NCBI GenBank assembly: GCA_965644495.1
Contig: CBFFSA010000009.1
Span: 248,001-312,000 of the forward strand
Direction of reading: 5' to 3'
Length of the DNA stretch: 64,000 bases
Source of the DNA: Perkinsela sp. CCAP 1560/9
Lineage: Eukaryota > Protista > Euglenozoa: Kinetoplastea
The notes under the pieces are model-generated. The model was not told where the DNA came from. It saw nothing but the letters and a program-made list of their open reading frames with translations, and searched no databases. The first letter of the stretch is position 1; every line of letters begins with the position of its first letter. The position numbers and the translations under genes were made by a program. Positions 7,194-60,430 of this stretch are shown here, in pieces.

Positions 7194-7868
7194 ATGCCCG
7201 ACGCCTTACCTAACCTTGTCCCAGAAAGCTACACAACAGAAAGTCCAAAAAGTGCTTTCTTTGAGTTATGTTCCCTTAAACGATTGGGTGTAACTGTACG
7301 GGATGAATTAGTTGCGAGTCTCCCAAAAGCGATTCAGTACGTAAAGGAGAAAAAGGCTATCACGCCCATTCTCGAAAGCGCTGCTGTCACATCTGCAAAG
7401 GGAAACACCGTGAATGGAGCCCGCATCGTCCGCCGCACACTTGAAGCTATGTTGCGCGGAGATTTCACCTCGGAACACGTTGCCCAAACTGTTCTTGTGG
7501 CACTACGTGATGCGATTTGCGCACTCGAGTCAGAGTTGGAGGAAAATGAAAGCAATCTGGTCGTCCAAGAGGCTAGCACTCCCCTCCGAGACGAGCGCAA
7601 CAGCAAGGATCTTCGCACTGCATTTCGCACGCTTATCGGAACGCGCGAAGATCCTCGGTGCGGTAACCAACTGCACCAAAGCCTCACGGACACCGGTTTC
7701 ACCACAGAACCTTGGTTTGTTCAACAAGTAAAAAGGGCTGTGAAGGAATCAGTGGGGAACCGACCTGACACTTTGCATTACGCAAAGCTCTTGGCAGACT
7801 CCCCTCCGGATTCACCGATAGCCAACGGCGAACCAGAAGGTATTCGGCTCGGTGTTTGGTCCCTGTAA
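7194..7868 (+). CDS. Putative gag-like ORF1 of a YR (VIPER/DIRS-like) retroelement
   Basis: 224-aa ORF overlapping the start of the YR ORF; assigned by position only. Confidence 0.45.
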   Translation: MPDALPNLVPESYTTESPKSAFFELCSLKRLGVTVRDELVASLPKAIQYVKEKKAITPILESAAVTSAKGNTVNGARIVRRTLEAMLRGDFTSEHVAQTVLVALRDAICALESELEENESNLVVQEASTPLRDERNSKDLRTAFRTLIGTREDPRCGNQLHQSLTDTGFTTEPWFVQQVKRAVKESVGNRPDTLHYAKLLADSPPDSPIANGEPEGIRLGVWSL

Positions 7869-8812
7869 CATCGACCTACAGTCATACCAAGTTAGTTCAA
7901 GAGTTATTTGAACAGATATTCACTATTTCTCTTGAAGACTCAATTATGCCACAACTTAGACGTCACCGTATAAGTGATCAAATAGTACAAGATGAAACAC
8001 AACGTTTGCTTCAAGCAAACGTCCACTCACAGCTCGCCCAACTTGCTGTAGCCCCAGAAACTGCTCGAAGGCGATCCCTTAACTTCTCAAGTATCGAGCA
8101 TTTCTTGGGAGTACACGGCGTATGCAACATTACCGAAGAAGCCTTTTTGGCTCTTTGTGTATGCCTATCTCGATTTTATCGAGCATCAAGGCTAGAGGCT
8201 TTACGCGCTGCCCTAGTATGGCGGCAACTTGAAGAGACACCTATAGAGCGATGCTTGGCACAAACGACCCGTTTTCGACGGCGGTTCAAAGGAGCCACTC
8301 GTTTGTGCCTGGATCCCCAACCCAGGGGCTCGATTACCTTTGACCAACTAACACAACTGACAGAGTATTGCCGTGAGGCTGAGGAATTAGAATACGCTCG
8401 GGGCTTTGCTATAGCGTATTTCGGCCTCTTGCGGCATAGTGAAATGGCGTTATTACGCAGAGACGATGTCGAGACAGAAACTGCGACTCTACGGGTTCGT
8501 GGTGGAAAAGGACGCCTCCACTATGAGGTTGACATCGTACTCGTACCAGAAGTTCAGCATCTATTAACTTACCTAAAAAACGTCGGTACTACCGTTCTAC
8601 TACTTCCGTACTGGAACAAAGTCAAGGCTAACGCCTTGATATGTGCAGCAGCTGCACATTTTAAATGGAATAAGCGCCAGAGTTGGTCGTTCCACTGTCT
8701 CCGTCATGGGGGTGCCGGTCACCTCACCCGCCAAGGCAGTGAGCTCTCTACACGACTTTTACGAGGTCGATGGATGTCCGCATTCAGCGCGGAAGCATAT
8801 TCTATAGTGTAA
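7856..8812 (+). CDS. Tyrosine recombinase (phage integrase family) of a YR retroelement
   Basis: YFGLLRHSE (R), GGKGR (K), HCLRHGG (H-x-x-R), GRW, terminal AEAY (Tyr): complete catalytic set. Confidence 0.9.
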   Translation: MVPVTSTYSHTKLVQELFEQIFTISLEDSIMPQLRRHRISDQIVQDETQRLLQANVHSQLAQLAVAPETARRRSLNFSSIEHFLGVHGVCNITEEAFLALCVCLSRFYRASRLEALRAALVWRQLEETPIERCLAQTTRFRRRFKGATRLCLDPQPRGSITFDQLTQLTEYCREAEELEYARGFAIAYFGLLRHSEMALLRRDDVETETATLRVRGGKGRLHYEVDIVLVPEVQHLLTYLKNVGTTVLLLPYWNKVKANALICAAAAHFKWNKRQSWSFHCLRHGGAGHLTRQGSELSTRLLRGRWMSAFSAEAYSIV

Positions 8813-8973: not shown

Positions 8974-10554
8974 CCGTTACCCCCCCTTACTTCACCTCCC
9001 CCCTTACTTCACCACATTTCAGAAATTCAGTCAGAAATTGTAAAATTTCATTGATTTCAATATTTATTCAATACACGATGGCCCCACCACTTCTATTCTT
9101 TAACGCGAGCCAAGTGACTCAATCCTCACCGTTGCCACACGAAACTGTTGCCGTACTGCTCTTCCCCGATGATACTTCAACTACCCCATCCACCGCATTA
9201 ATGTTGAATGCATCTAACCAGCTTGCTGAGCAGCCGCGGAAGGTTCGGATGGATCTTACCATACAACAAAAAAACAACCTATGTGCTAGTATAGATGCCG
9301 GCAAGTCTATAAGCGTCGCCGCCCGAGATTACAAGGTCGAGGTAAGCACGGTACATAGAGTTTATCGGAAAAAAGAAGATTGGCATAAATTTACTCAACT
9401 TGGCTTTGGGAAATTGTTTCAGTACCACCCCCCTCGAGCAAATAAAGAATTATATGAAAAAGGGTTGTCGCAACTGCTTTTGCTACGCGAGTCTCTTTCG
9501 GCACGAAACCGACAATGTTGGGGTACTTTGCTGAAATTTCAGAGCACTTCTGTTCCCTTACCGACAAAGGAAAAGAAAATTTTTGGATTCGTTTTTGCAT
9601 CTTCGCCAATATTTCGCGACGAAGAGTCAATGGAGCAACCCAAATGGTCCCAAAAGACATGGACGAGCGTATAGAAGCCTTTTTGAATATGATAGCTCTG
9701 CGAAATTGTGATCGCGGGGGATACGCTGTAATCGTCACGGGACGAGACCTGTGTTGTGTGGGAGCCCGTCAATGAAATCACATACGACACTAAAGGGACA
9801 AAGCGCGTAAAGGTTTTAACTACAGGGAAGGAGAAGAAGAAGCGAAAGTCATGAAGTCCGCCATAGAGTCAGCGCGTAACAGGAATCCAGCGCTTAACGC
9901 AACCCCAGTACAGGAGTGTTGTTATTGCACGCGAGTGAATTTAACTCTACGGGAGTGTAGTGAACCTGGGTGTTTAACGAAATTTCATCACATGTGTGCA
10001 ATTGAAGAAAAGGGGGAAGAGAATGACAATTTCTGCGCAAAGCACTAACGATGGCCGCAGGTCAGGGACACTGCATATATTTTCGGCAGTGTTGGGGCTT
10101 AGCGCACCTCACCTTCCCCAGCTTTTTACGTCCACAGCACCGTTTTTAATATTCGTCGTATCTAAGTTTTTCTGTGGTTTTACTTAGTGTCTTGCAAAGC
10201 CTCTATAGGTATCATATTTTCTTTCTTCATTTTATATATTTAAGCCGGCACATTAGAAACTAAATTCGGGCGTAGCGTATTTTCATGATGTTAGTTACTT
10301 TCTGTAGAAGTCAATGATCTTTTAATTCATTTTATGAAGTCAATGATCTTTCCGAACTATGGCAAGCGTGAAACAGAAAATTTCATTCAACCCTGAAGTG
10401 AGCATGACGGGCGATAAGGATTTTACTGGAGGAACTTGACAACTTAATAATCCCCCCCTTACTTCACCACCCCCCTTACTTCACCACAAAGTATGTTTTA
10501 GGGCCAAAAAGTTTTGGGCCAAAAAGTGGGGGCTAAGTAAGGGGGGGGTAACAG
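8974..10554 (+). mobile_element. pogo/Tigger-like DNA transposon, internally deleted, inserted in the YR retroelement
   Basis: TIRs ccgttacccccccttactt / aagtaaggggggggtaacag flanked by TA; CENP-B-like HTH (LTIQQKNNL...VSTVHRVYRKKE), DET...TKGTKRVKVLTTGKEK DDE_1 start, C-terminal Cys/His finger (9851-10048). Confidence 0.85.
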
Positions 10555-10556
10555 TA

Positions 10557-12190
10557 TATGCACGCTCTTAAGATTATTTATTATACTAAGTATATTGGGA
10601 TTTATAAATTATACAGCAACCCGGAAACATAACTCGAGCGTATACTCGTGCTTCAGACACTATACAAGTGGTCAGGCTTTGAGATTGTAGAGTACACTTT
10701 AGTGTTGACGCCCAGATTAGATGGGCATCAGCTCACGAATGTGTAGCATCACCCCTGACGACTTGACGACAGTATTTTATGGTTCTATTGGTATGGGCTT
10801 TCACGTATTATTCACGACCAATGAGAAACGATTACCCTCGTGACAAAATTTACGGGATAGAACGAATATACGATGCCCTGCCACCACCGGAAAGCAAATC
10901 GCGAGGGGCATGGGCCTCCGACGATGACCCACTTTGCACAATAGATAACGTCGGGGGTTTCAAAGTTGACTTACTATCGGTCTCATGTGCTCGTTTCACG
11001 AAAAGTGCAATCTCACTTTTGAAACTATGTCTCATCGATAGGGACACAATAGTGCCGACTTTAGAGAGCTCCCCGAACTCTGAACGCTTTAGAAAGCATA
11101 TATTGCGGTGGTTGTATAACTACCGCTGTACCCTCGATTATTGAAAAAAAAGTGAACAAAAACAGTGAAAATATAAAGAGGAACACAGTAATATAATAGA
11201 AGAAAAAAATATAAAAGGGGGCTCCGGTGGTCCAAAACTGAAAAAAAAAATTGAAAAAAATGGGGGGTCTAGGGGGGGTCCATGGGGGGGGTATACGTCG
11301 CGATTTTTTTTCAAATTTTTTGCTTTTCAAAATCGAGCGCGCGGAAGTGGTAGAGTATGCCGCGGCGATGATTTTCCACCCCCACACCTGGGGGTGACAC
11401 CCCCTGGTACACGTAGGAGGGGTCCGACAAGGTCGAAATTTCCGAAATTTTTGGGGGGACCCAAAAAAAAATATTTTTGACCAAAAAAAAGTAAAAACAA
11501 TATTTTTCCAAAATCGACCCCTAAAACGTATTTTGAGAGTTTGGGACCTCAGCTACCATTCTACGATGTTTTTTCCGTCAGATGCGCCTCCTACCCCTAC
11601 TGGTAAGGCTTCAAAAACGGCCCAAATTCGGGTTAAAATTTCGCATTTTTGGCCCAAAAATCGGGCATTTTCACTGAAAAAAATAGTTTATCCATGATCT
11701 TTCGGCGATTTTTCTTTTTTAGTCGCTTCGTTAAACGCGGTGGTAGTTTTTAACGCGAAGCGCGCAGCATGACTGACTTCCAAGTGCCAAATACGCTCGA
11801 GCTATCTTCAACTTGAGATGGGCAAACGACAATTGTCTCGACTACAAAGTTAACTTTAGTCTACCAAGCACCCAGGACCTTATTATATCACTTATTAAGC
11901 TGGGGATTGTACAACAAAAAAAATAAGATTTTTGCACCTAAACATAAAGAACATGTATTATCAAGTGCCTACTTCTGATACCTTCGGTCAAGTATGTTGC
12001 GTCCGACTCGGGCGAAAAATCTTGAAACCAAGTGTGCTTCCAATAGGGTGTAAACACGCCTGTGGCATTGCTCAAGCAATTACATGGGGGGTCATACTAC
12101 ACGAGAAAAATGGCGATCACATATTAAGCGTCGAAGATAACATACGCGAGCGTAGTGACGTGCCAGGGAGCATGCAGTTACCCACAGGAG
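10557..12190 (+). pseudogene. Decayed reverse transcriptase of the YR retroelement, interrupted by a hairpin-ended element
   Basis: IKNMYYQVP...LPIGCKHACGIAQAITWG resembles DIRS/VIPER-type RT motifs; lies downstream of YR, giving gag-YR-RT order. Confidence 0.6.
11103..11785 (+). mobile_element. Hairpin-ended non-autonomous element (family H), right end truncated
   Basis: Starts ttgcggtggttgtataactaccgc; homologous to 24822-25704 and 46253-47115. Confidence 0.8.
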
Positions 12191-12650
12191 GTTTGACTAA
12201 TAAACTTATAAATGATGCAGCTCACCACTTGAACACTCGAACATGGACTATGCATTCATTGCGGCATGGGAAGGCCACTGAGCTTCGAGTCCGTGGTGTT
12301 CCTATTTCAGAGAGGCAATTAATGGGACGATGGCGGTCTCACTCGTCAGAACAATCCAATGTCACAGCCTACCAGCGCCAAGGGAGTCCAACTCCCCGTA
12401 ACTAACCAGCATGTGACATCCAATGTTACAGCCTACCAGCGGGAACATGAGAGTGTTGCGGTACTTCACCATGTCTAACTGCCCTGCAGCATGCTAAGTC
12501 CAGCCCTATACGGTTCGAATGTCATCGGCAAGACTGACACATCCAATTCAAGGCGTACAACTCGACCGAATGATCGCTCCCCCCTCCTCTCCCGGTCTTT
12601 GAGCGACCTGCTCCAGGCTTGGGACTGGAAACTGCGGAGTTTCCAAGAAG
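12191..12650 (+). pseudogene. YR C-terminal fragment plus downstream repeat, linked to an LRR-A gene
   Basis: WTMHSLRHGKATELRVRGVPISERQLMGRWRS homologous to the 7856 YR C-terminus; copies at ~15778, 32100, 39855, 49040. Confidence 0.8.
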
Positions 12651-12988
12651 CCACATGCGACGTAGATAAAGTAAACAATACGTTTTTGTAAGACAACTTC
12701 TATCAAATCACAGTTCTCAGATATTGCTTTTAGACTGTTATACACGTTGTGGATGTGTTGTCTGTTATGCACATTGCATTGGTGTTGAGCGACAGAAATT
12801 AATCAAGGGGGTACGGTAGGTCGTACACTTTTTTGAGGTAAGAAAGTTTATAAGATCTTCCAAAAACAATAAAATTTATTGAATGAATGAAGCTCCCCCT
12901 AAATCCCCCGCCCACACATTTTTATTCCCTTTATCATGCTCTTTATTCTCTTTAAATTCTCTTTATTCTCTCTATCTTTTTATCTGAT

Positions 12989-14034
12989 TCAATGATTCTC
13001 CAGCTTTATCTGTGTGTTATATACGCACAAACCGAACTCTTGCACATCTTCAGGGAATGGCGATTTTGTTATGTTGCTACGCAAGTTCACATTATACGAT
13101 AGTTGATGTTCATGCGCTCGCTGGCGCAGAGATACAGCCCTTGATGCGACGGCCGATATCATCAGCGCAATCCGCAATGGCGGATGTCGCACCGAGGGGC
13201 ATTCGACACGGACTCTGTCGGTAGAGGGGGTCTAGGCAACTCGCCCTCTCTTTACGCAGCCGGAGGGGCGCACTGCAACCGACTCGGTCCCAGTCGGTAG
13301 AGGTGGTCCAGGCAACTCACTACCTCTTTACGCAGCCGGAGGGGCGCACTGCAACCGACCGCTGCCTCGCGATAATACAAGGCAGAGTCACGCCCAGTGA
13401 TCCTCAAGGGAAGCCACCATGGCGCATGGCTCCCCGGGAAGGAAAAGGCGCGAAAGGAAGAAAGCCGGGGAGGGAAGAAAACTCACTAAAAGAGTGAGCC
13501 GGGGAGGGGTGATGGGGTGGAAGCGCGTCCCCTGCTTCACCGAGGAAGAGGGACAGTTTCGGCCTTAGTGCCGGCCGGCAACGGGCATATAAACAGTAAG
13601 ACTATGCCCGTTGCCGGGGAAAGAAAAGATGAACTAAAGGAAAATCAACAAGGTACAGAAACTGTATCTTTATCGTACAGACTATGTGGGAGATGAATCA
13701 AGTTCATAGTGCCTGTCAAATCTAGTTGACCCCAGTCCACGTGGCTGACTTCTTCCCGCTCGTTACAACTCACACCTTCCCACTCACATGCTGGCGTGTG
13801 ATGACGCCACGATTCTTCCAAGTTGTGGACTTCAGCGAGGAGACGAACAAGGTGATACTCGTGAGGTAAATTCGCAGCGCTCACTTTGGCAATACGCGAT
13901 CTCGTCTTTGCAGTTTGTTCAGCAGAATGAGTGTTGGAAGGTATTGGGCTTTCGACTTTACGTCGTTTAGTCGATGGTCGCTGAGTATCCGAACATGTGA
14001 CCCGCACGATCGTGCGTAGGGTTAAGCGCAGCAT
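12989..14034 (-). pseudogene. LRR-A gene whose central repeats are replaced by an SL-capped element
   Basis: N-terminal part 13674-14034 (to ...LPHSLYD) and C-terminal part 12989-13101 (LSYNVNL...ENH) match intact paralogues; the intervening repeats are missing. Confidence 0.9.
13102..13673 (-). mobile_element. Short non-autonomous RLE-retroelement derivative with SL-like 5' end
   Basis: SL-like 28-mer at 13646-13673; hairpin 13563-13640; 3' end motif tcatgcgc..gcgcagagat shared with RLE elements at 14777 and 63111. Confidence 0.8.
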
Positions 14035-14776: not shown

Positions 14777-15767
14777 CAATATGATATTCATGCAGTTTAT
14801 CTGCAGAGATTGATACCCAGAAGACGCATGACACTGAAGGGAGTTCAGTGCCCGAGTTGAGCTGTTGAGCTTTCCCCTGGCACCTACTTCAATGGCCAGG
14901 AGAAATGTGGCTGGATTCGACATTTTCCTTTGTAGATACATAAGGATGCCCATACTTCTGCATCTTCCGTTCGTGTGAGGAGATAAAGTTTTCCTCCCAC
15001 GGAGATGTCAGTTCGAGTATGAACTCAGAACCGTTCTTAAGTTTGATCCATCCATCAGGTCGGAGGGACGTTTCCTGCCCGCTCAGCCAGGTTGGCGGAT
15101 TCTGATAGTGAGCGAGGTCAAAGTGACACTGTGCGGTTTCGGGGGATTGTCGTATAGCATCTGCAAGGGCGTGTAGGATGAGGTTATGACGGAAGGTATA
15201 CCGCCCCTGTTGCAGAGCGACCTTGTAGCCTGTGAGAACGTGGCTCACAGTTTGTACGTCTTCTTTGCAAATGGGGCATTTAAGGTTCGAGTGGGACTGA
15301 GGCCCCAGCGGTGTAAGGCGGATCGGGTCGGAAGCGGTGTCTGTGTCAGAACACATGAAGAAAATCTGGAGAGCGACGTACTTTTTATATTGCACAGAGC
15401 AGCAGCGAAGTCTTTCGCGAGGTCGTCTTCTGTAGCCATGCGAAACCACTGCCCCGCGATTGGTGCTCGACGCTGCACAGCTTCTGAAAGATGTCTTTCA
15501 TATTCATGTTCAATGTACTGCCGTGTCGATGCGTGATTTTCACTGCGGTCGTACAACTCGACGACTTGTCGCACTTGTCCGGAAGAGCGTTTGTCGAGCT
15601 CACGACGGATGCGATATCTCAGCGCTTGTTGCACTGCTGGATCACGAGATTTTTTCATCTGTTCAACTGCTGTGCCTGTGCAGAGTAACCAAAGCTTAGA
15701 CAGGCTGGTGAGAGCCCAGCCGCGTTCAGAGTACAGAACTTCGCTCGTGGTCAAAAGGGCATATTTT
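14777..15767 (-). mobile_element. 3' part of an RLE non-LTR retrotransposon (HERO/NeSL/R4-like), frameshifted
   Basis: CPIC...HVLTG zinc knuckle, GRYTFRHN, RPDG, LELTSPWEEN, K..KY, IEVGARG. Confidence 0.85.
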
Positions 15768-15777
15768 GATAGTACAG

Positions 15778-16310
15778 TATATGGAAGGCCCTCGCGAAGG
15801 GCAATCCAGGTTCCTTATTGTTCCCGAGGTGGAATCGACGTTTGACTAATAAACTTATAAATGATGCAGCTCACCACTTGAACACTCGAACATGGACAAC
15901 ACTCGAACATGGACTATGCATTCATTGCGGCATGGGAAGGCCACTGAGCTTCGAGTCCGTGGTGTTCCTATTTCAGAGAGGCAATTAATGGGACGATGGC
16001 GGTCTCACTCGTCAGAACAATCCAATGTCACAGCCTACCAGCGCCAAGGGAGTCCAACTCTCCGTAACTAACCAGCATGTGACATCCAATGTTACAGCCT
16101 ACCAGCGGGAACATGAGAGTGTTGCGGTACTTCACCATGTCTAACTGCCCTGCAGCATGCTAAGTCCAGCCCTATACGGTTCGAATGTCATCGGCAAGAC
16201 TGACACATCCAATTCAAGGCGTACAACTCGACCGAATGATCGCTCCCCCCTCCTCTCCCGGTCTTTGAGCGACCTGCTCCAGGCTTGGGACTGGAAATTG
16301 CGGAGTTAAG
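15778..16310 (+). pseudogene. YR C-terminal fragment plus downstream repeat
   Basis: FLIVPEV...MHSLRHG...GRWRS; near-identical to the 12191 block. Confidence 0.8.
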
Positions 16311-16655
16311 AAGCCACATGCGACGTACATAAAGTAAACAATACGTTTTTGTAAGACAACTTCAATCAAATCACAGTTCTCAGACATTGCTTTTAGACTG
16401 TTATACACGTTGTGGATGTGTTGTCTGTTGTGCACATTTTTTGCAATGGTGTTGAGCGACAGAAATTAATCAAGGGGGTACGGCAGGTCGTACACTTTTT
16501 TACGGTAAGAAAGTTTATAAGATCTTCCAAAAACAATAGAATTTATTGAATGAATGAAGCTCCCCCCAAATCCCCCGCCCACACATTTTTATTCCCTTTA
16601 TCATGCTCTTTATTCTCTTTAAATTCTCTTTATTTTCTCTATCTTTTTATCTGAT

Positions 16656-18295
16656 TCAATGATTCTCCAGGTTTATCTGTGTGTTATATACGCACAAACC
16701 GAACTCTTGCACATCTTCAGGGAATGGCGATTTTGTTATGTTGCTACGCAAGTTCACATTATACGATAAATCCAAAGTCATCAATGAAGATGGGAGCTTC
16801 GCCAAGTTGACATCACCAGAAAACATATTGCGCGACAAATCAAGGTGCCAAATCCTCGAAGGAAGTTGCCGAAGATCGAGTTCGCCGGACAATTGATTTC
16901 CAGAGAGATTTACTTGCCGAATGTTAGGCGGAAGCAAAGTCAAATCAAGTGGCCCGGTAAGACGATTTTCGCGAAGGTTCACACTTTGCATATTAACCGG
17001 CAGACTCGTCAAACATACAGTTCCATTGAATCTGTTGCTATGCAAAGTTAAATGATGGAAGCAGTAGGGAAGAGAAGTCAAGTCCAACTCGCCTTCAAAC
17101 CGATTTTCGCACAGAATAGTGTTTTGTCATGCAGGGCAAGACCTGCAGAGATAATTAGGGCCCAGCAGGGGTAGGCGCAATCAACACTCCCTGCTGGACC
17201 CTTTCGGCCTCCGCGGCGACACAGGGGAAAGCTCGGGATATCATCCCCAGGAAAGCGAAAAGAAACGGCCTCATCGGGATAAGATATCCCGCGATACTCA
17301 GTGAGCGCAATGCACCAGGAAAGATATACGGATTTGTGGGACGCAGATGGTATTCCCGTCGTACATGCTACAAATGACCTCCATGGTTCATGATACAACA
17401 TGGTCAGGGCCATGGATGCATGCTGGCAAATGGAGTCATGGTTCATGATACATCTTGGGCATCGGGGTCCCACATAATCCGCCACGGCTGGTGAGCAAGA
17501 GAGGTGCATAGGACATCCTCTAGAACACGCATACAACGTGTTTGCTCGCCGTGTGGGAGACTTCAAGCGTTTGGAAGCCTCCTCCGCGAAGTACCGGTGT
17601 CGCGTGATGGTGAAGGCACGTCGCGTAGTCCCGTAGAAGGGTCCTGCAGCGCATGGGGACTCGGAACCGTGTTCGAGCGGGGTGGTGGGAGATGAAGGAA
17701 GGGAGGCGCACCCCTGCTTTACGACAAGAGGGACAGTTCCTTTCCTAGCGCCATCCGGAAACGGGCATGCGCATAGTAAAAATATGCCTGTTTCCGGGAG
17801 AGAAAAGATGAGCTAGGAAAAAAACAACAAGGTACAGAAACTGTATCTTTATAGCTAGCGATCGCAGTTCCGAAGGCAAGCGCGTGAGCGGTACTGCACC
17901 TTCTAGAGCGTTCTGACGCGCATCAAAATCATACAGACTATGTGGGAGATAAATCAGGTTCATAGCACCTGACAAATCTAGTTGACCCCATTCCATGCGG
18001 CTGACTTCTTCCCGCTCGTTACAACCCACACCTTCCCACTCACATGCTGGCGTGTCAAGACTCCACGATTCGTCCAAGTTGTGGACTTCGGCGAGGAGAC
18101 GAACAAGGTGATACTCTTGCGGTAAATTCGCAGCGCTCACTTTGGCAATACGCGATCTCATATTTGTAATTTGTTCATCGGAATGGGTGTTCGAAGATAC
18201 TGGAGTTTCGACTTTACGACGTTTAGTCGATGGCTCCTGAATATCCGAACATACAGCATGAGCCGTACGATCATGTGTAGCGTCAAGCGCAGCCT
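16656..18295 (-). pseudogene. LRR-A pseudogene interrupted by a 738-bp SL-capped insertion
   Basis: Removing 17116-17853 rejoins ...LRSLA|LCENRFEGELDL; start codon is AGG and there is a small indel near 18250. Confidence 0.9.
17116..17852 (-). mobile_element. Short non-autonomous element with SL-like 5' end; clean insertion with at most a 1-bp duplication
   Basis: SL-like 28-mer 17825-17852; hairpin 17741-17820; 3' motif tcatgcagg..cctgcagagat. Confidence 0.85.
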
Positions 18296-23557: not shown

Positions 23558-24157
23558 ATGCCGAAAACACTTCGCCGCCAGAGACGCACCCTCTCGACGC
23601 AACAAATCACTTATGAAACACGTATAATTTGCGTGCATGAGGTACAAAACCAGGGACGTTCGATTACAGACACTGCTGCTTTTATGAAATGCAGTGAAGC
23701 TACTGTCTCTCGATGGGTTAAACGCCACCGGGAGACAGGAGGGTTAGAACGTGTCGCCCTAAAAAAATTTTCTGATATGATAGGGCAGCCTATGGCAGCG
23801 CACGTTGCTCAGACATTAGAGCTACTCTTCGAGTACGCTTCATCTCGAGATGCACCTCCGGGTTTCCTAGAAGCACTAAACCATCACAAGCATCGACTGG
23901 AAAAGAACCATAATATGAAATTTTGGAAGGAGGTTATGTGGTTCAGACCAAGTTGGATAGTGCAATGCGCTCGACCATCAAACACTCCCCCAATTTCTTG
24001 GGAACGCGCCAACAATCTCTTTCCCGGATCTCTGTACCGTCCAGAAAATAGTAACGAGCCTCCAATTTTTTGCATTACCGAGGAGGAGTGGAAGGAATAC
24101 ATGTATGTAGCATATGAGGACTACAGATGGGATCCGCTCGCACGCCAACGAATATGA
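23558..24157 (+). CDS. HTH protein of a Tc1/IS630-like element
   Basis: GRSITDTAAFMKCSEATVSRWVKRHRETG; TIR-like tactgtcaccccccc at ~23202. Confidence 0.55.
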   Translation: MPKTLRRQRRTLSTQQITYETRIICVHEVQNQGRSITDTAAFMKCSEATVSRWVKRHRETGGLERVALKKFSDMIGQPMAAHVAQTLELLFEYASSRDAPPGFLEALNHHKHRLEKNHNMKFWKEVMWFRPSWIVQCARPSNTPPISWERANNLFPGSLYRPENSNEPPIFCITEEEWKEYMYVAYEDYRWDPLARQRI

Positions 24158-35464: not shown

Positions 35465-37550
35465 TCACGTCCTCACGTGCGCAACGAAGGACGCAAGTTC
35501 TCTGCGGGCATCCGACTTACCAGCATGCGCGCCTGGGCTCGCATTAGAGTCACATTCATTTCCGTGAGGAGGCGTTGGAAGGCCTTTCCTCTCGAAAGAG
35601 TGCCCTGCGAAGCGGCTGAGCGACGCTCGGAGAACCTCACGGAGAATGGCCTGCGCGCTGTCGGACCACGATCCGAAGGATTCCACTGCCATAGCGGTGA
35701 ATCTGTACCCTTGGGATTCAGCCTCGAGGCGCTCCGTTTGTGCTCCGTAGCGTACCGCTCGGCAAAGGATCCCGCTTTCCACACGTTAGCACCTCGGACT
35801 CAGTCCGTATAATATACCTATGTGTTCTATGAACACTTTTTTTTTCCATTGAACACATAGAACGCATTGAACACTTTCTGGGGAGGTACACATCCCACGA
35901 ACATGTTGATTATTTTTCATAAACCTTCTTTGTTTTGCGCATATCCAAGTGATTACACATGCCCGAGCATACATATACCCGAGCATACATATACTATATG
36001 TATGTGGGTTACTGAACGTGGGTAACGCAGAAGTCCAATACCAAGCCGGTAGCTAGGCCAAAGTTCGGGAGGAATACGTCTCCTGGTCGGGTGGGGCCAC
36101 CGCCAGGGCCGTAGGCTAACCTCTCGTTGTGGGGCGAAGTGCGCCTTGGTACACACGTCGTAGAAGTGGTCGACCAGGGCGTTGTGCCGAGAAAGTAGAC
36201 CGTAGCCACTTTTGCAAGCTAGGGCGTGCCTGCCATCTGGTTCGGCCTAGCGGTTGGCTACACTTGTCCATAGGGTAAGGGCGGGGGGCATTGTGGACGT
36301 CTGCCCCGAGCCACCAACGGGCCAGGGCGCGGAACGCCGTAGGGATAAGGGCGTACCCCAGCTCTTTGGATGGGAGAGCAAAGGCCCAGTTTGCGGCCCC
36401 ATCCCCACTTTGAGAAAGCCATCTTTCTTTAGTTGGTGTTTTCTTTAGTTGGTCTTTAGGTGGTGCTGGATTTGCCGGGGGGACTCAGGATCCTCTGGTA
36501 AGAGGTACCCTGTATGGACGTTGATGAGAGGTCTTCCGGATAGTTCGTTTACGTGGGTCATTGCCTCCCGGAATCCTTCTGCATCCAGTGCATCCCATCC
36601 GTCTTGGCTGGCTGCGAAGGAGACTGAGGAAGCGTACCCCGCTGAGTAGAAAAGAGAAGAGGAAGTCCAAAACCGCCATATTTTTTTCTGCGCTGAGCGC
36701 TGAGCGCATCCGGAAGGATCGAGTGAGCAAAGTGCGTCCTCTAAAACTTGTAGCACCGCGGTGTCGAGACGCAAACATAGATCTAATAGGGGTTTAGGGG
36801 CTATGGTGCGGAGGGAGAAGACGAGCTGACAAAAGCCAGAGCACTGGCGGATGAGGGTTAACGCCACTTGGGGATCGGCGATTTTCTTTATAGCGCTAAG
36901 TGTGGACAATGCTGGGGCCAAGGCGTGTTCGCGGAGGTAATCACTACAGTATTGCGCGGATCCCAGCTGGCTGCCTAGGATGCTGAAATTGCCATCGAAG
37001 AGAATTCTTTGTTATGGGATCTCAGGGATCAATAAAGTCACGAGGTGTGCGGACGGGGGGTGTAGGGTCACTTCACACTTCTGAGTGTTAAGAAGGAGTC
37101 CGAGCTGTCGACCTTCCTGCTCAATGACTTCGAGGGCTTGCTTGACGAGCGCCGCCTTGCCGGCAAGTACCCCGTCGTCAAGGTACCAGACATGGAGGAA
37201 AAGTTCTTCAGGAAACTCAGCGTTAATAATTTGCGCGAGATGATGGATTACGAGGGAGAAAAGGAGCGGTCCCAAGGGATCGCCTTGTTGAACGCCTTCT
37301 GCGGAGTGCAGAATGTGTTGCCCAAAGGTGACGTAGCTGTCCGTTTCGTAACACCATTCTACCCATTTAGAGAGGGGGTTAGGAAAGTGCTTCTGAGTCA
37401 AGGAGGGAAAGGCGGATCTTGAGACGTCATTAAACGCGTTTGAGAGATCAATTTTGCACAGGACGAAATCTGGGTCGTCAGCATGCTTGGTCACCGTCTG
37501 ACGACAGAGATGAATCATGCGTTCGGCGCCAGCGGCGGTGGCGACACCAT
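35465..37550 (-). pseudogene. Decayed CRE-clade non-LTR retrotransposon (RT + RLE)
   Basis: KIDLSNAFN, GVQQGDPLGPLLF, YLDDG, RPGDV...LDFCVTH, AVESFG; many frameshifts. Confidence 0.85.
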
Positions 37551-42953: not shown

Positions 42954-45030
42954 TCACGTGCGCAACGAAGGACGCAAGTTCTCTGCGGGCATCCGACTTA
43001 CCAGCATGCGCGCTTGGGCTCGCATTAGAGTCACATTCATTTCCGTGAGGAGGCGTTGGAAGGCCTTTCCTCTCGAAAGAGTGCCCTGTGAAGCGGCTGA
43101 GCGACGCTCGGCGACCTCACGGAGAATGGCCTGCGCGCTGTCGGACCACGATCCGAAGGATTCCACTGCCATAGCGGTGAATCTGTACCCTTGGGATTCA
43201 GCCTCGAGGCGCTCCGTTTGTGCTCCGTAGCGTACCGCTCGGCAAAGGATCCCGCTTTCCACACGTTAGCACCTCGGACTCAGTCCGTATAATATACCTA
43301 TGTGTTCTATGAACACTTTTTTTTTCCATTGAACACATAGAACGCATTGAACACTTTCTGGGGAGGTACACATCCCACGAACATGTTGATTATTTTTCAT
43401 AAACCTTCTTTGTTTTGCGCATATCCAAGTGATTACACATGCCCGAGCATACATATACCCGAGCATACATATACTATATGTATGTGGGTTACTGAACGTG
43501 GGTAACGCAGAAGTCCAATACCAAGCCGGTAGCTAGGCCAAAGTTCGGGAGGAATACGTCTCCTGGTCGGGTGGGGCAACCGCCAGGGCCGTAGGCTAAC
43601 CTCTCGTTGTGGGGCGAAGTGCGCCTTGGTACACACGTCGTAGAAGTGGTCGACCAGGGCGTTGTGCCGAGAAAGTAGACCGTAGCCACTTTTGCAAGCT
43701 AGGGCGTGCCTGCCATCTGGTTCGGCCTAGCGGTTGGCTACACTTGTCCATAGGGCAAGGGCGGGGGGCATTGTGGACGTCTGCCCCGAGCCACCAACGG
43801 GCCAGGGCGCGGAACTCCGTAGGGATAAGGGCGTACCCCAGCTCTTTGGATGGGAGAGCAAAGGCCCAGTTTGCGGCCCCATCCCCACTTTGAGAAAGCC
43901 ATCTTTCTTTAGTTGGTGTTTTCTTTAGTTGGTCTTTAGGTGGTGTTGGATTTGCCGGGGGGACTCAGGATCCTCTGGTAAGAGGTACCCTGTATGGACG
44001 TTGATGAGAGGTCTTCCGGATAGTTCGTTTACGTGGGTCATTGCCTCCCGGAATTCTTCTGCATCCAGTGCATCCCATCCGTCTTGGCTGGCTGCGAAGG
44101 AGACTGAGGAAGCGTACCCCGCTGAGTAGAAAAGAGAAGAGGAAGTCCAAAACCGCCATATTTTTTTCTGCGCTGAGCGCTGAGCGCATCCGGAAGGATC
44201 GAGTGAGCAAAGTGCGTCCTCTAAAACTTGTAGCACCGCGGTGTCGAGACGCAAACATAGATCTAATAGGGGTTTAGGGGCTGTGGTGCGGAGGGAGAAG
44301 ACGAGCTGACAAAAGCCAGAGCACTGGCGGATGAGGGTTAACGCCACTTGGGGATCGGCGATTTTCTTTATAGCGCTAAGTGTGGACAATGCTGGGGCCA
44401 AGGCGTGTTCGCGGAGGTAATCACTACAGTATTGCGCGGATCCCACCTGGCTGCCTAGGATGCTGAAATTGCCATCGAAGAGAATTCTTTGTTATGGGAT
44501 CTCAGGGATCAATAAAGTCACGAGGTGTGCGGACGGGGGGTGTAGGGTCACTTCACACTTCTGAGTGTTAAGAAGGAGTCCGAGCTGTCGACCTTCCTGC
44601 TCAATGACTTCGAGGGCTTGCTTGACGAGCGCCGCCTTGCCGGCAAGTACCCCGTCGTCAAGGTACCAGACATGGAGGAAAAGTTCTTCAGGAAACTCAG
44701 CGTTAATAATTTGCGCGAGATGATGGATTACGAGGGAGAAAAGGAGCGGTCCCAAGGGATCGCCTTGTTGAACGCCTTCTGCGGAGTGCAGAATGTGTTG
44801 CCCAAAGGTGACGTAGCTGTCCGTTTCGTAACACCATTCTACCCATTTAGAGAGGGGGTTAGGAAAGTGCTTCTGAGTCAAGGAGGGAAAGGCGGATCTT
44901 GAGACGTCATTAAACGCGTTTGAGAGATCAATTTTGCACAGGACGAAATCTGGGTCGTCAGCATGCTTGGTCACCGTCTGACGACAGAGATGAATCATGC
45001 GTTCGGCGCCAGCGGCGGTGGCGACACCAT
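42954..45030 (-). pseudogene. Decayed CRE-clade retrotransposon (duplicate copy)
   Basis: RT ORF 44492-44998 identical in protein to 37012-37518. Confidence 0.85.
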
Positions 45031-49853: not shown

Positions 49854-50819
49854 TCAATAATCCCCTACATTTATCTGTGTGTTATATACGCCCAAACCGA
49901 ACTCTTGCATATCTTCAGGAAATGGCGATCTTGTTATGTTGCCACACAAGTCCACATTATCTGATAAGTCCAAAGTCATCAAGAAAGATGGAAGGTTCGT
50001 CAAGTCCACATCACCAGAAAACTTATTCTGCGACAAATCAAGTCGAAAAATACTTGCAGGAAGTTGTCGGAGATCGAGTTCGCCGGACAGCTGATTTCCA
50101 GAGAGATATACTTGCGATATGTTAGGCGGAAGCAAAGTCAAATCAAGTGGCCCGGTAAGACAATTTTCGCTAAGGTTTACACTTTGCATATTAGCGGGCA
50201 GGCTCGTCAAATCAAGTGAGCCGGTAAGACGATTTCCGCCAAGGTCTACATTTTGCATATTGACCGGCAGACTCGTCAAACACACAATTCCATTGAACCT
50301 GTTGTGATTTAACGCCAAATCTTCGAAGCAGTGCGGAAGAGAAGTCAAGTCCAACTCGCCTTCAAACCGATTTACGTACAGAGCTAGCGATCGCAGTTCC
50401 GAAGGCAAGCGCGTGAGCGGCACTGTCCCTTCTAGCGCGTTCCCAGGCACAGCAAAATCGTACAGACTATGTGGGAGATGAACCAAGTTCATAGTACCTG
50501 ACAAATGTAGTCGACCCCATTCCACGCGGCTGACTTCTTCCCGCTCGTTACAACTCACACCTTCCCACTTGCATGCTGGCGTGTGAAGACTCCACGATTC
50601 GTCCAAGTTGTGGACTTCCGCGAGGAGACGAACGAGTTGATACTCTTGAGGTAAATTCGCAGCGCTCACTTTAGCAATACGCGATCTCGTCTTTGTAGTT
50701 TCTTCAGCAGAATGAGTGTTGGAAGGTATTGGGCTTTCGACTTCACGTCGTTTAGTCGACGGTTCCTGAATATCCGAACATGTGAGCTGCACGATAGTGC
50801 GTAGGGCTAAGCGCCGCAT
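49854..50819 (-). CDS. LRR-A protein, 321 aa (one extra 23-aa repeat), intact
   Basis: 321-298 = 23 aa; two adjacent MQxVxLxxN repeats. Confidence 0.92.
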   Translation of the reverse strand: MRRLALRTIVQLTCSDIQEPSTKRREVESPIPSNTHSAEETTKTRSRIAKVSAANLPQEYQLVRLLAEVHNLDESWSLHTPACKWEGVSCNEREEVSRVEWGRLHLSGTMNLVHLPHSLYDFAVPGNALEGTVPLTRLPSELRSLALYVNRFEGELDLTSLPHCFEDLALNHNRFNGIVCLTSLPVNMQNVDLGGNRLTGSLDLTSLPANMQSVNLSENCLTGPLDLTLLPPNISQVYLSGNQLSGELDLRQLPASIFRLDLSQNKFSGDVDLTNLPSFLMTLDLSDNVDLCGNITRSPFPEDMQEFGLGVYNTQINVGDY

Positions 50820-51976: not shown

Positions 51977-53197
51977 GGCAATGGGAACTTATATTGTACC
52001 CAAATTTTTGTTTTTCATTTTGTTTGTATTTTGTCGCACTTTTTTGCTAATGTTAATTTTTTGGCTCTGTACATCTATCCTACGTATTTTTGTCCAATAT
52101 GTGCTCTTCGGTGCATTCTCCGATGGAAGCATGATGGAGATATTCCAAATAATTTTGTGTCGTTCCTGATATCTCATGGAATAGTGCGACAAGAAAAATG
52201 CCCTACACATAAATTGCCTGGCACTCCTCACAAGGCGAATCCCTCATTGTCCATTTGGTGGCGCAGAAATTGTGGTGCTAAATGCAGGAAACGCCTCACT
52301 AGGCTCGCAACTTTTCTTTCTTCGAAACAAAAAAAGCCAGAAATGAAATTCATGTTTTGGACCAAACTTTGCCAACGGCTCGAAATGGCAAGTCTGGCCT
52401 CACAGTGTATGGTAGCCCGACGTACTGTTTTCAAATGGTAAAAACAACTTCTGCTATGGATTCATAACGCCGTATTGAAACGCAACGAGAAAATCAAGTT
52501 CTCTAGGTGCGCAGTTGATGAAACCTATCTCTTTCCACGGAAATATCATCGGGGATGCCGAGTGAGAAAAAGATCTTTTTACATGGCTAGAATTACTGGG
52601 ATCGAAAGAGATGGTAGTTGTGGCCGCACTATATGGAAGCGCGTTGAAACAAGTGACAGGACTACTTTACAAAATTTTGTGAAGAAGCATACAGTGGATA
52701 GCTACCGCATGATCGTAAACACACATGCTTGGCGGGCGTACCGTGGATTAAATGCCGTAAGAGATCATCGAGTCGTGAACCACAGCACAAAAGGTAATTA
52801 TCGTTTTGTTACAAAGGAGGGAATACATACGAACAATGCCGAGTCGTGCCACTCTTCTGTAAAGAGGGGAATACGAAAGCAAGGAAGACTCTCAATGCAT
52901 CCGCATAAGGCCGATGAAGTTGTTTCATTACACACGCTGTTTTTTAAGAGCACAAGCTGACAAGAACGCTTCCGCGCTCTTTTGTTGGCTCTGAAGTCCG
53001 TAAAAGATGAAGTGGAAAGGGAAGAAGTAGAAACGACGAAGATAACGACAATGAAGAGATAGAAGATGACTCTGAAGAAGAGAGTGAAGATTGGGGTGTG
53101 ATTCAAGGTTTGTTGATTTGATTTGAATGTTAAAATAGACGAAAAATAGGTAAAAAGTGGAAAAAGTAGTAAAAAGTTCATATGGGTACAATATAAG
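51977..53197 (+). mobile_element. Merlin (IS1016/ISXO2-like) DNA transposon, decayed
   Basis: AVDET, RKYHRG, VVNHS, FVTKEGIHTNNAES motifs; in-frame TAA at 52439; inverted repeat acttatattgtaccca / tgggtacaatataagt. Confidence 0.85.
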
Positions 53198-53858: not shown

Positions 53859-53883
53859 TTTTTTTTGTCATCCCCCGAGTCCA

Positions 53884-55782
53884 TTAGCGCACGCCTCTGC
53901 GGTACCAGTTTTGTACCGCGGCATGCGCTATCTGGGCGTTCCCATTTTGGATGGCTACCCCGATTGCCATGATAAAATGGCTGAGGCAACCATTCTTCTT
54001 GCCGGTGGCCTTCCGAGCGACCAGATTTAGAAACTGAAGGGTCTCGGGGCCGGGGACACTGTACGTGGTGAAGGCCAAAGGGAAGAAATCCATCTCCCTG
54101 GCCCCCGCCATTTCCTCGTGAGTGCGCCTTTTGACACGCTCTGCCTGCCTTACGGTGAAGGAGGGCTCAGCTGCCTCCTTATCCACGTTGGATGGGGCCA
54201 GTGGGTTTACCACCGTCACGTCCACTAGGACTAGCTCCCGCCCCAAAAGGAAACAAATGTCCGGTCCCCGACCGTTATCGAATCTAGGTTCGACGAGGTC
54301 TGGGGAGAATCCGTACTGGATTAATAGGTTGCGGAAAGTTTCCTTGACCCCCTTGTGGCGAGAGGCTTGTGTCTTTCCCCGAACCTTTTTACAATCCATG
54401 GCGTGGACGCAGAACTCCTCATTTTTGAGGGCCGCGCCACAAACACATTGGATTTCTGGTTCGGAGGTGGGGGCCACCATGTACCGGAGTCTAGCGGCGG
54501 TCTCCCATTCGGGATCCCGCATGTAGTACTCCGGCCTGTTCGGCCACGCATTCATCCACTTGGTCGAGTGGATGTTCTGGATCTGTCGCATACAGACCAG
54601 ATGCGTGGCCGACGGTGCCTTGTCCAAAGCAGCCGCCCCATAGGCGCGTCTTTGCTCCCTGGCGGGGGTGCCGGGGGGCTGGCCTTGTAAGGCCTTGACT
54701 GCTTTGGCCTGCATGTCCTCCGCTTTGTCTTCGAAGGGGATGGTGCCCAGGAAGTCCGCCGTAAAAAGTTTGTTTACGAACGGCGTCGTTCCCATTGCAC
54801 CCATCCCTCCGATAAGAGCTTCGGAGCATGCGGTGATGGCCGCGTCCACCTGCAGGTTCGCCTTTTTGGTCACCCCCGGTTCGTACGTGCGAACTATGTA
54901 GTTCCACCGGGGGCTCCCGCATAGGCGGAGGAGAGGGAGGGCGCACTGTCTGGGTAAATCCTTGAGTTTACCCAAGAAATTAGTGACCTTGGGGACCTTG
55001 GAGAGGACCCATTCCTCTTCCCGCGCTTCCGAGGCGCCAATGTACGCCCCCAGAAGTTTCAGTCCCCCCGGACCGTGTTGCATCCGGCTCCCCGAGAAAG
55101 CCGAGTACAGGTCCGGGTGGCGGGTAGCCACCTTGCACTTGGCCATGTTGAGCTTTAAGCCCATAAACTTGATCTCCTTTTCCAAGGAGCCAAGGGCCTT
55201 AACGCACACCTCGGATTCCGCGGCTATGGTTATATCGTCGATATATGCCCGTAGCTTAAGGCAACCCGAGTATTTGGCTGCCACGGCCGAGATGGCCCCC
55301 TGAAACCCTAAGGCGAACAGGATGGGCGCCATCGGGTCCCCTTGTTTGACCCCCCGGGGGCTAGGGATATGTATCCCCTCCCCCAGGTGGAGTTTACTAG
55401 GGGTCCCGTACCCGAAAAGGGAGATCCCTATCATTGGGGATAGGTTAGGGTACCTTTTTAGGGCGCGGAATATGACCGCGCGTGAAATGCTATTGAACGC
55501 ATTTTCCAAATCGGCCGCCACGACCAACTCGTCGGGCCTGTCACGAAAGTGATCTCTCACCTCGTATATGACATGCTCACAGCCTTGGGTGTATTGGGCT
55601 CCAAATTGAAGGCCCTGAAACACTGCTGGGAGATGGTCCCTGACCTGTTCGAGGGCCAGTAGCCCCGCGAGCTTCAGTAGGACCTCCACCATGGCTATGG
55701 GCCTGTAGGATGAGTGATGTCCCACCGGGGCCCCAGGCTTATTGAAAAGCTTGAGGTTTGCTCCGGTGAGAAAATCCCTCAT
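53884..55782 (-). CDS. Reverse transcriptase + zinc knuckle + RLE endonuclease (CRE clade)
   Basis: YRPIA, DLENAFN, GVKQGDP, YIDD, LLG, CVC...HAMDC, RH, GPD...VDV. Confidence 0.92.
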   Translation of the reverse strand: MRDFLTGANLKLFNKPGAPVGHHSSYRPIAMVEVLLKLAGLLALEQVRDHLPAVFQGLQFGAQYTQGCEHVIYEVRDHFRDRPDELVVAADLENAFNSISRAVIFRALKRYPNLSPMIGISLFGYGTPSKLHLGEGIHIPSPRGVKQGDPMAPILFALGFQGAISAVAAKYSGCLKLRAYIDDITIAAESEVCVKALGSLEKEIKFMGLKLNMAKCKVATRHPDLYSAFSGSRMQHGPGGLKLLGAYIGASEAREEEWVLSKVPKVTNFLGKLKDLPRQCALPLLRLCGSPRWNYIVRTYEPGVTKKANLQVDAAITACSEALIGGMGAMGTTPFVNKLFTADFLGTIPFEDKAEDMQAKAVKALQGQPPGTPAREQRRAYGAAALDKAPSATHLVCMRQIQNIHSTKWMNAWPNRPEYYMRDPEWETAARLRYMVAPTSEPEIQCVCGAALKNEEFCVHAMDCKKVRGKTQASRHKGVKETFRNLLIQYGFSPDLVEPRFDNGRGPDICFLLGRELVLVDVTVVNPLAPSNVDKEAAEPSFTVRQAERVKRRTHEEMAGAREMDFFPLAFTTYSVPGPETLQFLNLVARKATGKKNGCLSHFIMAIGVAIQNGNAQIAHAAVQNWYRRGVR

Positions 55783-56470
55783 CGTGGGGGGGAGGGAGTT
55801 GATTAGGACAGCTGTTGGTGGGGAGGGGGATCGGAGCTATGGTTTCCGACCCCTCGAGGTGATCCCGTTTGCGAAGCTCCCTAGCCAGCTGCCTTTGGGA
55901 CACTTTGTCCTCGGGGAAAAACAGAAACCGTTTAACCCCGAGGAGTAGATCCCAGGCGATCTTAATTTTGCCTTCATACGACTTCCCCAGGAAGTTGCTA
56001 CACACAGACTTAGTGTAGTCCTTCCAGGCAGGGCATTGAACTGCGTATAGGGTACGCAGCGAGCCCCTTTCAAGGAGCTGTGCCAGGCTGTCCGGGGAGG
56101 GCGTGATGTCACCCGGCTCCGTCACCGCGCCTTGGGTATTGGGGGGCGTGACACTGGGGGCCTTGTAGGGAGGGTCCGTCCCAGCTAGATGGGGGTAAGG
56201 CGGCGGAGGAGAGGTGGGGCACTCGCATTCCTGACGGGAGGGCCTACGAGGAGATGTAGAGGCCGCGATTCCCTCCATAATAGTACCTTCCCCACCCGGG
56301 GTAGGGGTTGTAGCGCCGGGGGTAAGGACATTTTGGGTCTCCCTCCGGGCCTGCCACGTCTTAGAACGAGGACCTGGGTTTGCCTCGATACAGCCTCTGC
56401 GGAGGTTGCATTGAACAACACGGGTGGTCCAGCCCGTTTCGCTTACCAGGGTTTCTGTGGGAAGGAAACA

Positions 56471-58030: not shown

Positions 58031-58454
58031 GTCCGGCCTCGCCTTCTTCAGCTCCTCGATGGAGAGCTGGGGCAGCCCCTTGACCCCTACGGAGGGGTGG
58101 GGGCTGGTTATATTTTCACTCTTTATAATTAGTATAATTAGTATAATTAGTATAATTACTAATTACTATATTATTTATTATAGTATACTATATTATACTA
58201 ATTACTAATTAGTATAATTAGTATTTTCACTCTCTATATTTTCAATCTTTTTTTCACTTGTTTTCAATCATCGAGTGTAGAGCGGAAGTTATACATAAAA
58301 TATAAAATACATAAAAACACAAAAAATTATACATAAATTTACATGTAGAATGTCTTATTTTATAAAAACTGTTCAGTAATGTCTGTCAGTGAAACTCGTG
58401 GCAGTCAAGGCAGTCAGAAACGATAGAAAATGCCAATCTTGCACGATGTGTCCA

Positions 58455-60337: not shown

Positions 60338-60430
60338 GGGCATTGACATAGTAGAAATATGCCTGTGTCCGGGAGAGAAATGATGAGCTAGGAAAAAAAG
60401 TACAACAAGGTACAGAAACTGTATCTTTAT
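60338..60430 (-). mobile_element. 5' end of an SL-capped element inserted in an LRR gene
   Basis: SL-like 28-mer 60403-60430 plus half of the conserved hairpin; the rest is lost. Confidence 0.8.

What the first reader, a model, noticed from the sequence alone, without database searches (positions are those of the whole stretch)
17825..17852. Invariant spliced-leader-like 28-mer caps the 5' end of the LRR-inserted elements
Seen: ATAAAGATACAGTTTCTGTACCTTGTTG (minus strand) is identical at 13646-13673, 17825-17852 and 60403-60430. It directly abuts LRR coding sequence, and the bases right after it differ between copies. Established: kinetoplastid SL exons contain the core CAGTTTCTGTAC and end in TTG, and CRE/SLACS elements insert near nt 11 of the SL exon. 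Inference: either the element RNA is released from the LRR polycistron by trans-splicing and gains a fresh SL each cycle (possibly at the non-canonical TG ending the relic SL), or the sequence is a relic of an ancestral SL-gene target. The upstream flanks (TTAACG|, GTACG|, TAGCT|) resemble the missing SL 5' end (AACG/GCT), hinting at microhomology-guided 5' joining.
Basis: partly seen in the sequence, partly recalled or inferred. Interest (0 to 1): 0.85.

Follow-up and report, generated by a model that had tools for sequence, protein, structure and literature searches.

The report
Retroposons recapped by host spliced leader
In this protist the short leader that the cell splices onto every messenger RNA is also spliced onto jumping-gene RNA and copied back into the genome, so each new copy carries its own splice signal and gets a fresh front end every cycle; parts of this were known in relatives, but the repeated re-splicing had not been shown for such elements in the papers I could search.

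Summary
Confirmed. The 28-mer is nt 11-38 of this organism's 38-nt spliced-leader (SL) exon; the SL RNA gene lies on contig C1 beside 5S rRNA. The organism is a Perkinsela-like kinetoplastid. The 28-mer occurs 504 times genome-wide and heads many unrelated retroelement families. The three window copies head a 550-710 nt non-coding retroposon (at least 137 copies) that shares its 3' hairpin with a ~4.9 kb SL-headed RT-RLE LINE; both prefer one codon of LRR repeats. Fresh SL addition is supported: 72 places carry an SL followed by a cut-down older SL, 40 of 55 clean cases starting after TG or AG, some three deep. An SL-gene target relic (CRE/SLACS) is not supported: no target duplication, no promoter flank. 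Further: the short element holds a conserved antisense copy of the SL, the family's heads stop at nt 10-12, and the SL's 5' hairpin primes cDNA snap-back. RNA evidence is indirect. SL fragments near retrotransposons were reported in Perkinsela (2017), stacked relics in dinoflagellates; this scan noted SL-headed elements and LRR targeting before, on other DNA of this genome. New variant of a known kind.

The parts
17825..17852 (-). SL exon nt 11-38, head of short retroposon copy 2
   Evidence: identical to SL gene exon in L002
17115..17824 (-). Body of short retroposon copy 2 (710 nt, no conserved ORF), blunt insertion before the Leu codon of LxxN, no target duplication
   Evidence: empty-site paralogue at 49854-50819
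17755..17798 (-). Conserved long hairpin of the short element (one compensatory pair in 4 of 8 copies)
17717..17740 (-). Degenerate antisense copy of SL nt 2-26 in copy 2
   Evidence: duplex -20.6 kcal/mol, shuffles -9.0 +/- 2.0, 0 of 300
17127..17152 (-). 3' terminal hairpin shared with the LINE, followed by a short A/C tail
17853..18254 (-). 5' part of the interrupted LRR gene
16659..17114 (-). 3' part of the interrupted LRR gene
13646..13673 (-). SL nt 11-38, head of copy 1 (13674-13676 match SL nt 8-10 and LRR alike); junction lacks the GTAC that sister copies have
13102..13645 (-). Body of short retroposon copy 1 (544 nt; 94% identical to L016, L021, L022); antisense-SL at 13535-13560, 3' hairpin at 13110-13133; about 420 bp of LRR missing between its two junctions
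60403..60430 (-). SL nt 11-38, head of copy 3; 60431-60439 ambiguous between SL nt 2-10 and LRR codons
60337..60402 (-). First 66 nt of the short element (copy 3, broken off; an inverted-repeat element follows)
14777..15748 (-). 5'-truncated, frameshifted 3' end of the partner LINE (CCHC finger, PD..E endonuclease, shared 3' hairpin 14788-14810), joined to the same LRR codon as copy 1
   Evidence: 95.6% identical to the full element in L039

Best explanation
The 28-mer is the 3' part of the host SL exon, carried into the genome on retroelement RNA. Cycle: (1) a copy is transcribed by read-through from a host polycistron, often an LRR gene in the same orientation (inferred); (2) the relaxed Perkinsela-type spliceosome adds a new SL at an acceptor in or just behind the old SL relic, which is followed by a U-rich tract: usually the terminal TG, which restores the same junction (inferred), sometimes an inner TG, AG or AC, which leaves a stacked relic, or a site a few bases into the body, which erodes it (products shown in DNA); (3) the ~4.9 kb RT-RLE LINE recognises the 3' hairpin it shares with the short element and inserts it by target-primed reverse transcription without target duplication, often just before the Leu codon of LxxN in LRR genes (junctions shown, enzyme step inferred); (4) copying by this family ends at SL nt 10-12, giving the 28-mer (shown; cause unknown). 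The element thus needs no promoter or ribozyme of its own: the relic is a portable splice acceptor that renews the 5' end.
For: SL RNA gene with exon + GT donor, tandem 297-bp unit, next to 5S, fold z -6.6. Same SL heads unrelated families in sense orientation 29-51 nt before an ATG. SL identical while first 150 nt of short-element subfamilies are only 66-78% identical. 72 stacked relics, control 0; 30 after TG, 10 after AG, 11 after AC, 3 after TA, 1 after CA; four triple stacks. Matched control anchored at nt 25 finds 15 places, none a short suffix duplication, 3 clean restarts near the SL 5' end. Staggered downstream junctions within families. Dispersed copies lack the gene's promoter flank and mostly end at nt 3 or later. 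Run X5 (RNA is a guess) has SL contigs running into U-rich leaders and ATG with no short-element body, not matching held loci. Perkinsela uses AG 27%, TG 26%, AT 15% (PMC5601477).
Against: No run on record as RNA; no short-element transcript seen. The three AG/TG start points are also the only G positions in range, so polymerase slippage at a 1-2 nt match to the terminal TG could give the same starts; only the 14 AC/TA cases and the control argue against it. Many of the 72 are duplicates of one event (at least about 8 distinct contexts). Splicing at the terminal TG leaves no trace and is inferred. AC is not among the three acceptors named for Perkinsela.
Confidence: 0.8

Rival explanations
1. 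Relic of an SL-gene target (CRE/SLACS type): the 28-mer is a target-site duplication inherited from an ancestor that inserted at nt 11-12 of SL genes.
For: The family's heads start at nt 10-12, close to the SLACS/CZAR site between nt 11 and 12 (PMC5814959). A few 3' ends run into SL pieces.
Against: In CRE elements nt 11 marks the 3' junction; here it is the 5' junction. Only 2 of about 59 short-element 3' ends meet an SL. No target duplication. No intact SL gene interrupted, no promoter flank. An inherited relic would diverge with the body and would not stack.
Confidence: 0.05
2. The SL is an inherited, selected part of the element (SL-RNA-derived head); the RNA is released by another cut, for example self-cleavage or a nuclease acting at nt 9-11 guided by the antisense-SL duplex, and stacks come from reverse-transcriptase slippage or template jumps onto free SL RNA.
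For: Commonest short-element junction reads TTG|GTAC, like the gene's TTG|GTAT donor. Antisense-SL pairs 64 of 64 cells over nt 19-26 and 47 of 56 over nt 11-17. Stutters of nt 11-18 suggest the template ends at nt 11. Template jumps are evident (LINE-SINE chains, L039).
Against: The LINE has no antisense-SL yet stops at the same place, so the stop is not caused by the duplex. No ribozyme match in Rfam; no conserved HDV-type core by inspection. Does not explain SL heads on unrelated families or AC/TA stacks.
Confidence: 0.12
3. Assembly or library artefact (cDNA contamination, adapter-like sequence).
For: Window junctions themselves are not spanned by a listed contig.
Against: DNA runs X1, X2, X4 cover SL, short-element body and LINE; copies carry mutations, interrupt genes at a fixed codon and recur in a public assembly.
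Confidence: 0.02

Closest known systems
Dispersed SL fragments in Perkinsela sp. CCAP1560/4 (Tanifuji et al. 2017, PMC5601477, Suppl. Notes 1.2-1.4)
   Same: 38-nt exon, one intact gene, more than 500 SL-matching places, 24 near retrotransposons, an SL on an element transcript by RT-PCR, hundreds of LRR genes, non-AG acceptors.
   Different: Different SL sequence; their elements are ingi-like and many matches are SL introns; they left the link open and report no SL-headed copies, stacked relics, short partner element or LRR targeting.
Dinoflagellate relict SLs (Slamovits and Keeling 2008, as reviewed in PMC6050394)
   Same: Stacked, shortened SL relics record repeated rounds of splicing and retroposition.
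   Different: There they mark host retrogenes and the mobilising element is unknown; here they mark the retroelements themselves, in a kinetoplastid, with several acceptor types.
CRE clade: SLACS, CZAR, CRE1, CRE2 (PMC12278014, PMC5814959); NeSL
   Same: RT plus restriction-like endonuclease, association with the SL.
   Different: They insert into SL genes with target duplications and poly(A) tails; this family carries the SL at its 5' end, inserts elsewhere, has no duplication and ends in a hairpin plus short A/C tail.
R2 HDV-like ribozyme and ingi/L1Tc Pr77 (PMC3774820, PMC5814959)
   Same: Solve the same problem: freeing the element's 5' end from a host co-transcript.
   Different: They use an element-encoded ribozyme or promoter and give unspliced RNA; here host trans-splicing does it.
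cDNA snap-back at R2 5' junctions (PMC11371274)
   Same: cDNA 3' end primes on itself before joining the target.
   Different: Here the fold-back is set by the 5' hairpin of the host SL and is preserved in natural insertions.

Membership tests
Kinetoplastid SL exon | Gene with short exon, GT donor and structured intron, in tandem units | tested here: met
   L002: two 297-bp units, exon + GTATGAG, three or four stem-loops, z -6.6; 5S rRNA adjacent
Kinetoplastid SL exon | Conserved core CAGTTTCTGTAC and terminal TTG | tested here: met
   Shared with the Perkinsela SL primer in PMC5601477
Kinetoplastid SL exon | Present at 5' ends of host mRNAs | tested here: inconclusive
   X5 contigs fit, but the run is only guessed to be RNA
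Kinetoplastid SL exon | Cap-4 methylation | not testable with these tools
   Copies mostly stop at nt 3, compatible with a block at nt 1-2
CRE clade (SLACS/CZAR/CRE1/CRE2) | Insertion into SL RNA genes between nt 11 and 12 | tested here: not met
   2 of about 59 3' ends meet an SL piece, none an SL gene
CRE clade (SLACS/CZAR/CRE1/CRE2) | Target-site duplication and poly(A) tail | tested here: not met
   Blunt or small deletion at copy 2, L022, L041; hairpin plus A/C tail
R2-group (RLE) non-LTR retrotransposon (partner LINE) | RT followed by CCHC finger and PD-(D/E)xK endonuclease | tested here: met
   RVT_1 E 1.3e-31, zf-RVT below cut-off, R2 structures E 1e-28 to 1e-24; motifs read in translation
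R2-group (RLE) non-LTR retrotransposon (partner LINE) | Clade placement (HERO, NeSL, other) by RT tree | not tested
   No named references held; HERO-like motif is from memory only
Non-autonomous SINE-like partner | Short, non-coding, dispersed, 3' end shared with a LINE | tested here: met
   At least 137 copies; shared 3' hairpin
Classical SINE | tRNA-, 7SL- or 5S-derived Pol III head | tested here: not met
   No ARAGORN or Rfam match
ingi/RIME/NARTc | APE endonuclease partner and Pr77 HDV-like ribozyme head | tested here: not met
   Partner has RLE; head is the SL; no Rfam ribozyme
Dinoflagellate-type relict SL recycling | Stacked relics cut at an acceptor inside the older SL | tested here: met
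Dinoflagellate-type relict SL recycling | Host protein genes carry the relics | tested here: inconclusive
   Most heads examined belong to mobile elements; L009 ORF unidentified

The most novel reading that the evidence does not exclude
The short element is a trans-splicing parasite that steers its own processing: its conserved antisense-SL segment pairs with the SL (the incoming SL RNA or its own head), masking inner acceptors or holding the leader away from ribosomes, so the host leader is a working structural part of the element's RNA.
Probability: 0.2. Interest if true: 0.85.

Novelty: new variant of a known kind. Interest (0 to 1): 0.63.

Why it matters
It offers a third solution, after internal promoters and ribozymes, to how non-LTR elements renew their 5' end, and answers a link left open for Perkinsela in 2017. 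Several hundred SL heads form a DNA record of acceptor choice by a reduced, non-AG spliceosome, of where reverse transcriptase stops on a capped leader, and of second-strand priming, readable without RNA data. Insertion at a fixed LRR codon may help drive turnover of the large LRR family.

Tried and rejected
Cap-misreading as the cause of T at nt 2 (65 of 100 listed copies): set aside as the sole cause because the SL's nt 3-7/12-16 hairpin predicts exactly T, AT, TAT by cDNA fold-back, and four copies show perfect fold-backs of 8, 9, 18 and at least 20 nt; non-templated A remains possible. A second SL gene type with T at nt 2: none among 7 exon+intron copies. HDV-like ribozyme in the short element: catalytic C and P3 not conserved by inspection, no Rfam hit. 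Window RT element 53884-58070 as partner: different 3' end; its relative L038 has no SL. Malik and Eickbush 2000 (NeSL) was not held.

Full report
Observation. The 28-mer is exact at all three stated places, minus strand, with none expected by chance. Each copy directly follows LRR coding sequence in the same orientation. It is far more common than the window suggests: 504 copies with up to 2 mismatches, 398 exact, in a 21 Mb genome, and at least 606 places hold the last 15 nt.

It is the real spliced leader. On contig C1 two tandem 297-bp units read AACTTTAACG + 28-mer + GTATGAG. The 107-nt RNA folds into stem-loops (z -6.6) and 5S rRNA lies about 400 bp away. The exon is therefore 38 nt and the 28-mer is nt 11-38; the start at nt 1 is inferred from the usual AAC start and the 38-nt exon of Perkinsela. 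Five further exon+intron copies have foreign 5' flanks and simple-repeat tails, i.e. retrocopies of the SL RNA. Tanifuji et al. 2017 (PMC5601477) describe for Perkinsela sp. a 38-nt exon, one intact gene, over 500 SL matches, 24 near retrotransposons, hundreds of LRR genes and acceptors AG 27%, TG 26%, AT 15%. Their SL differs from this one, so this is a relative. The only run that may be RNA (X5) has SL contigs that continue into U-rich leaders and ATG codons, an intact LRR paralogue, and no short-element or LINE sequence, whereas DNA runs cover all of these; the continuations are not in any held locus. This fits trans-spliced mRNA but the run type is a guess.

What the SL heads. Among 37 loci the SL sits in sense orientation 29-51 nt before ORFs of several unrelated elements: CRE-like proteins with an LsmAD-like N-terminus, one with RNase H, a zinc-finger ORF of a probable tyrosine-recombinase element, and others. 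The window copies head a non-coding element of 544 nt (copy 1), 710 nt (copy 2) and a 66-nt stump (copy 3), with at least 137 copies. It has no tRNA or Rfam match. Its 3' hairpin is shared with a LINE whose 3' end lies at 14777-15748. Relatives of that fragment lie about 5 kb behind SL heads at C1:2073390 and C1:235280, and a full copy (L039) shows SL nt 11-38, a 35-nt leader, RT, CCHC finger and PD..E endonuclease. A 45% relative is in the EukProt set PhF_6.

Insertion sites. Copy 2 is blunt against paralogue 49854, with no duplication, just before the Leu codon of LxxN. Copy 1, the LINE fragment, L021, L022, L041 and L042 meet the same codon. By eye, 13 of about 59 short-element 3' flanks fit this frame strictly, about 2 expected (Poisson 4e-7); tail boundaries were judged by hand. 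Only 2 run into an SL piece, as head-to-tail dimers. An earlier agent reported this LRR preference on other DNA (s1-682826); I had noted it before reading that.

The SL is renewed. First, heads are identical across subfamilies whose first 150 nt are 66-78% identical, although heads do mutate after insertion. Second, 72 places show an SL end followed by a shorter SL end (reversed-pattern control 0). Of 55 clean cases 30 start after TG (nt 27-28), 8 after AG (21-22), 2 after AG (15-16), 11 after AC, 3 after TA, 1 after CA; four places are three deep. The binomial value overstates the case because many are duplicates of one event. The AG/TG starts are also the only G positions, so slippage at the terminal TG is a real alternative; against it, 14 cases have no microhomology, and the same search anchored at nt 25 finds no short duplication. 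Third, junctions are also staggered downstream: sister copies start GTAC, TAC, ATTTT (copy 1), TTTT (copy 2) or after an AG 13 nt in (L040). Together these are what re-splicing near the relic's end would leave. Use of the terminal TG itself is invisible and inferred.

Not an SL-gene target relic. CRE elements insert between nt 11 and 12 of SL genes with duplications and poly(A) (PMC12278014, PMC5814959). None of that holds for this family, and no dispersed copy listed carries the gene's upstream flank.

Why 28 nt. Of 36 exact short-element heads reaching nt 11, only 4 reach nt 8; 6 more stop at nt 12. The LINE stops there too, sometimes with stutters of nt 11-18. Other families often reach nt 3 (284 places). 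Nt 8-11 is the loop of the SL's 5' hairpin. Whether the RNA is cut there, a cap-bound protein blocks the enzyme, or a DNA hairpin is opened there is unknown. In heads that reach nt 3 the preceding base is T in 65 of 100 where the gene has A; four copies carry perfect fold-backs of 8 to at least 20 nt, so cDNA snap-back on that hairpin occurs, as known for R2 in cells (PMC11371274).

Antisense SL. About 85-115 nt into the short element lies a degenerate reverse complement of SL nt 2-26. Duplex energies are -19.8 to -26.8 kcal/mol against about -9 +/- 2 for shuffles, 0 of 300, in nine copies and in none of seven other families or the LINE. Over nt 19-26 all 64 cells pair, with changes kept by G-U; over nt 11-17, 47 of 56. 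The changes are transitions, so this is modest evidence of selection, and a competing local hairpin exists. It may have begun as an inverted SL copy. Its role is open.

Verdict. Observation confirmed; the renewal model is the best reading (0.8). It works like dinoflagellate relict-SL recycling (PMC6050394) and fills the role of the R2 and ingi ribozymes (PMC3774820), but the family is not CRE and not ingi. New variant of a known kind; interest 0.63. Limits: no confirmed RNA, genome fetches closed, and L038-L042 are from the same or a very near genome.

Noticed in passing
window 53860-58070 (-): Separate RT + RLE retroelement (RVT_1 E 3.7e-21) without SL head, ending in an A-rich tail; its 5' ORF 56471-58030 has a CxxC finger like the SL-headed ORF in L017.
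   Followed up: partly
L006, L018, L026, L027, L028: SL-headed CRE-like elements whose ORF starts with an LsmAD-like (ataxin-2/Pbp1) domain (Pfam E 9e-5 in L028, below cut-off); L006 also has RNase H (E 3e-13).
   Followed up: partly
window 7856-8812 (+), 11932-12405 (+): Tyrosine recombinase ORFs (Phage_integrase E 2e-8; weak for the second).
   Followed up: no
window 52475-52960 (+), 23558-24157 (+), 9051-9674 (+): DNA-transposon-like ORFs: ISXO2/IS1595-like DDE (E 4e-10), HTH and CENP-B domains, with many inverted-repeat elements; DNA transposons are reported absent from trypanosomatids (PMC12278014).
   Followed up: no
L033, L034, L035, L037: Retrocopies of the whole SL RNA ending after 67-70 intron nt with simple tandem-repeat tails; they mark the SL RNA's 3' end.
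   Followed up: partly
L002 1690-1710 and 1990-2008 (read on - strand): tRNA B-box-like motif on the opposite strand upstream of each SL gene; ARAGORN finds no tRNA.
   Followed up: no
C1:2.27-2.36 Mb, C16:159-237 kb: Chains of poly(A)-tailed elements joined tail-to-SL-head; 15 of 100 listed heads share one upstream flank, some in 3.4-3.8 kb tandem units.
   Followed up: partly
window 12190-13100 and 15850-16770: Segmental duplication (3666 bp apart) of LRR 3' end and downstream DNA.
   Followed up: no
window 37012-37518 (-), 44492-44998 (-): RT fragments (RVT_1 E 3e-16 for the first) in a 7.4 kb-spaced duplication.
   Followed up: no
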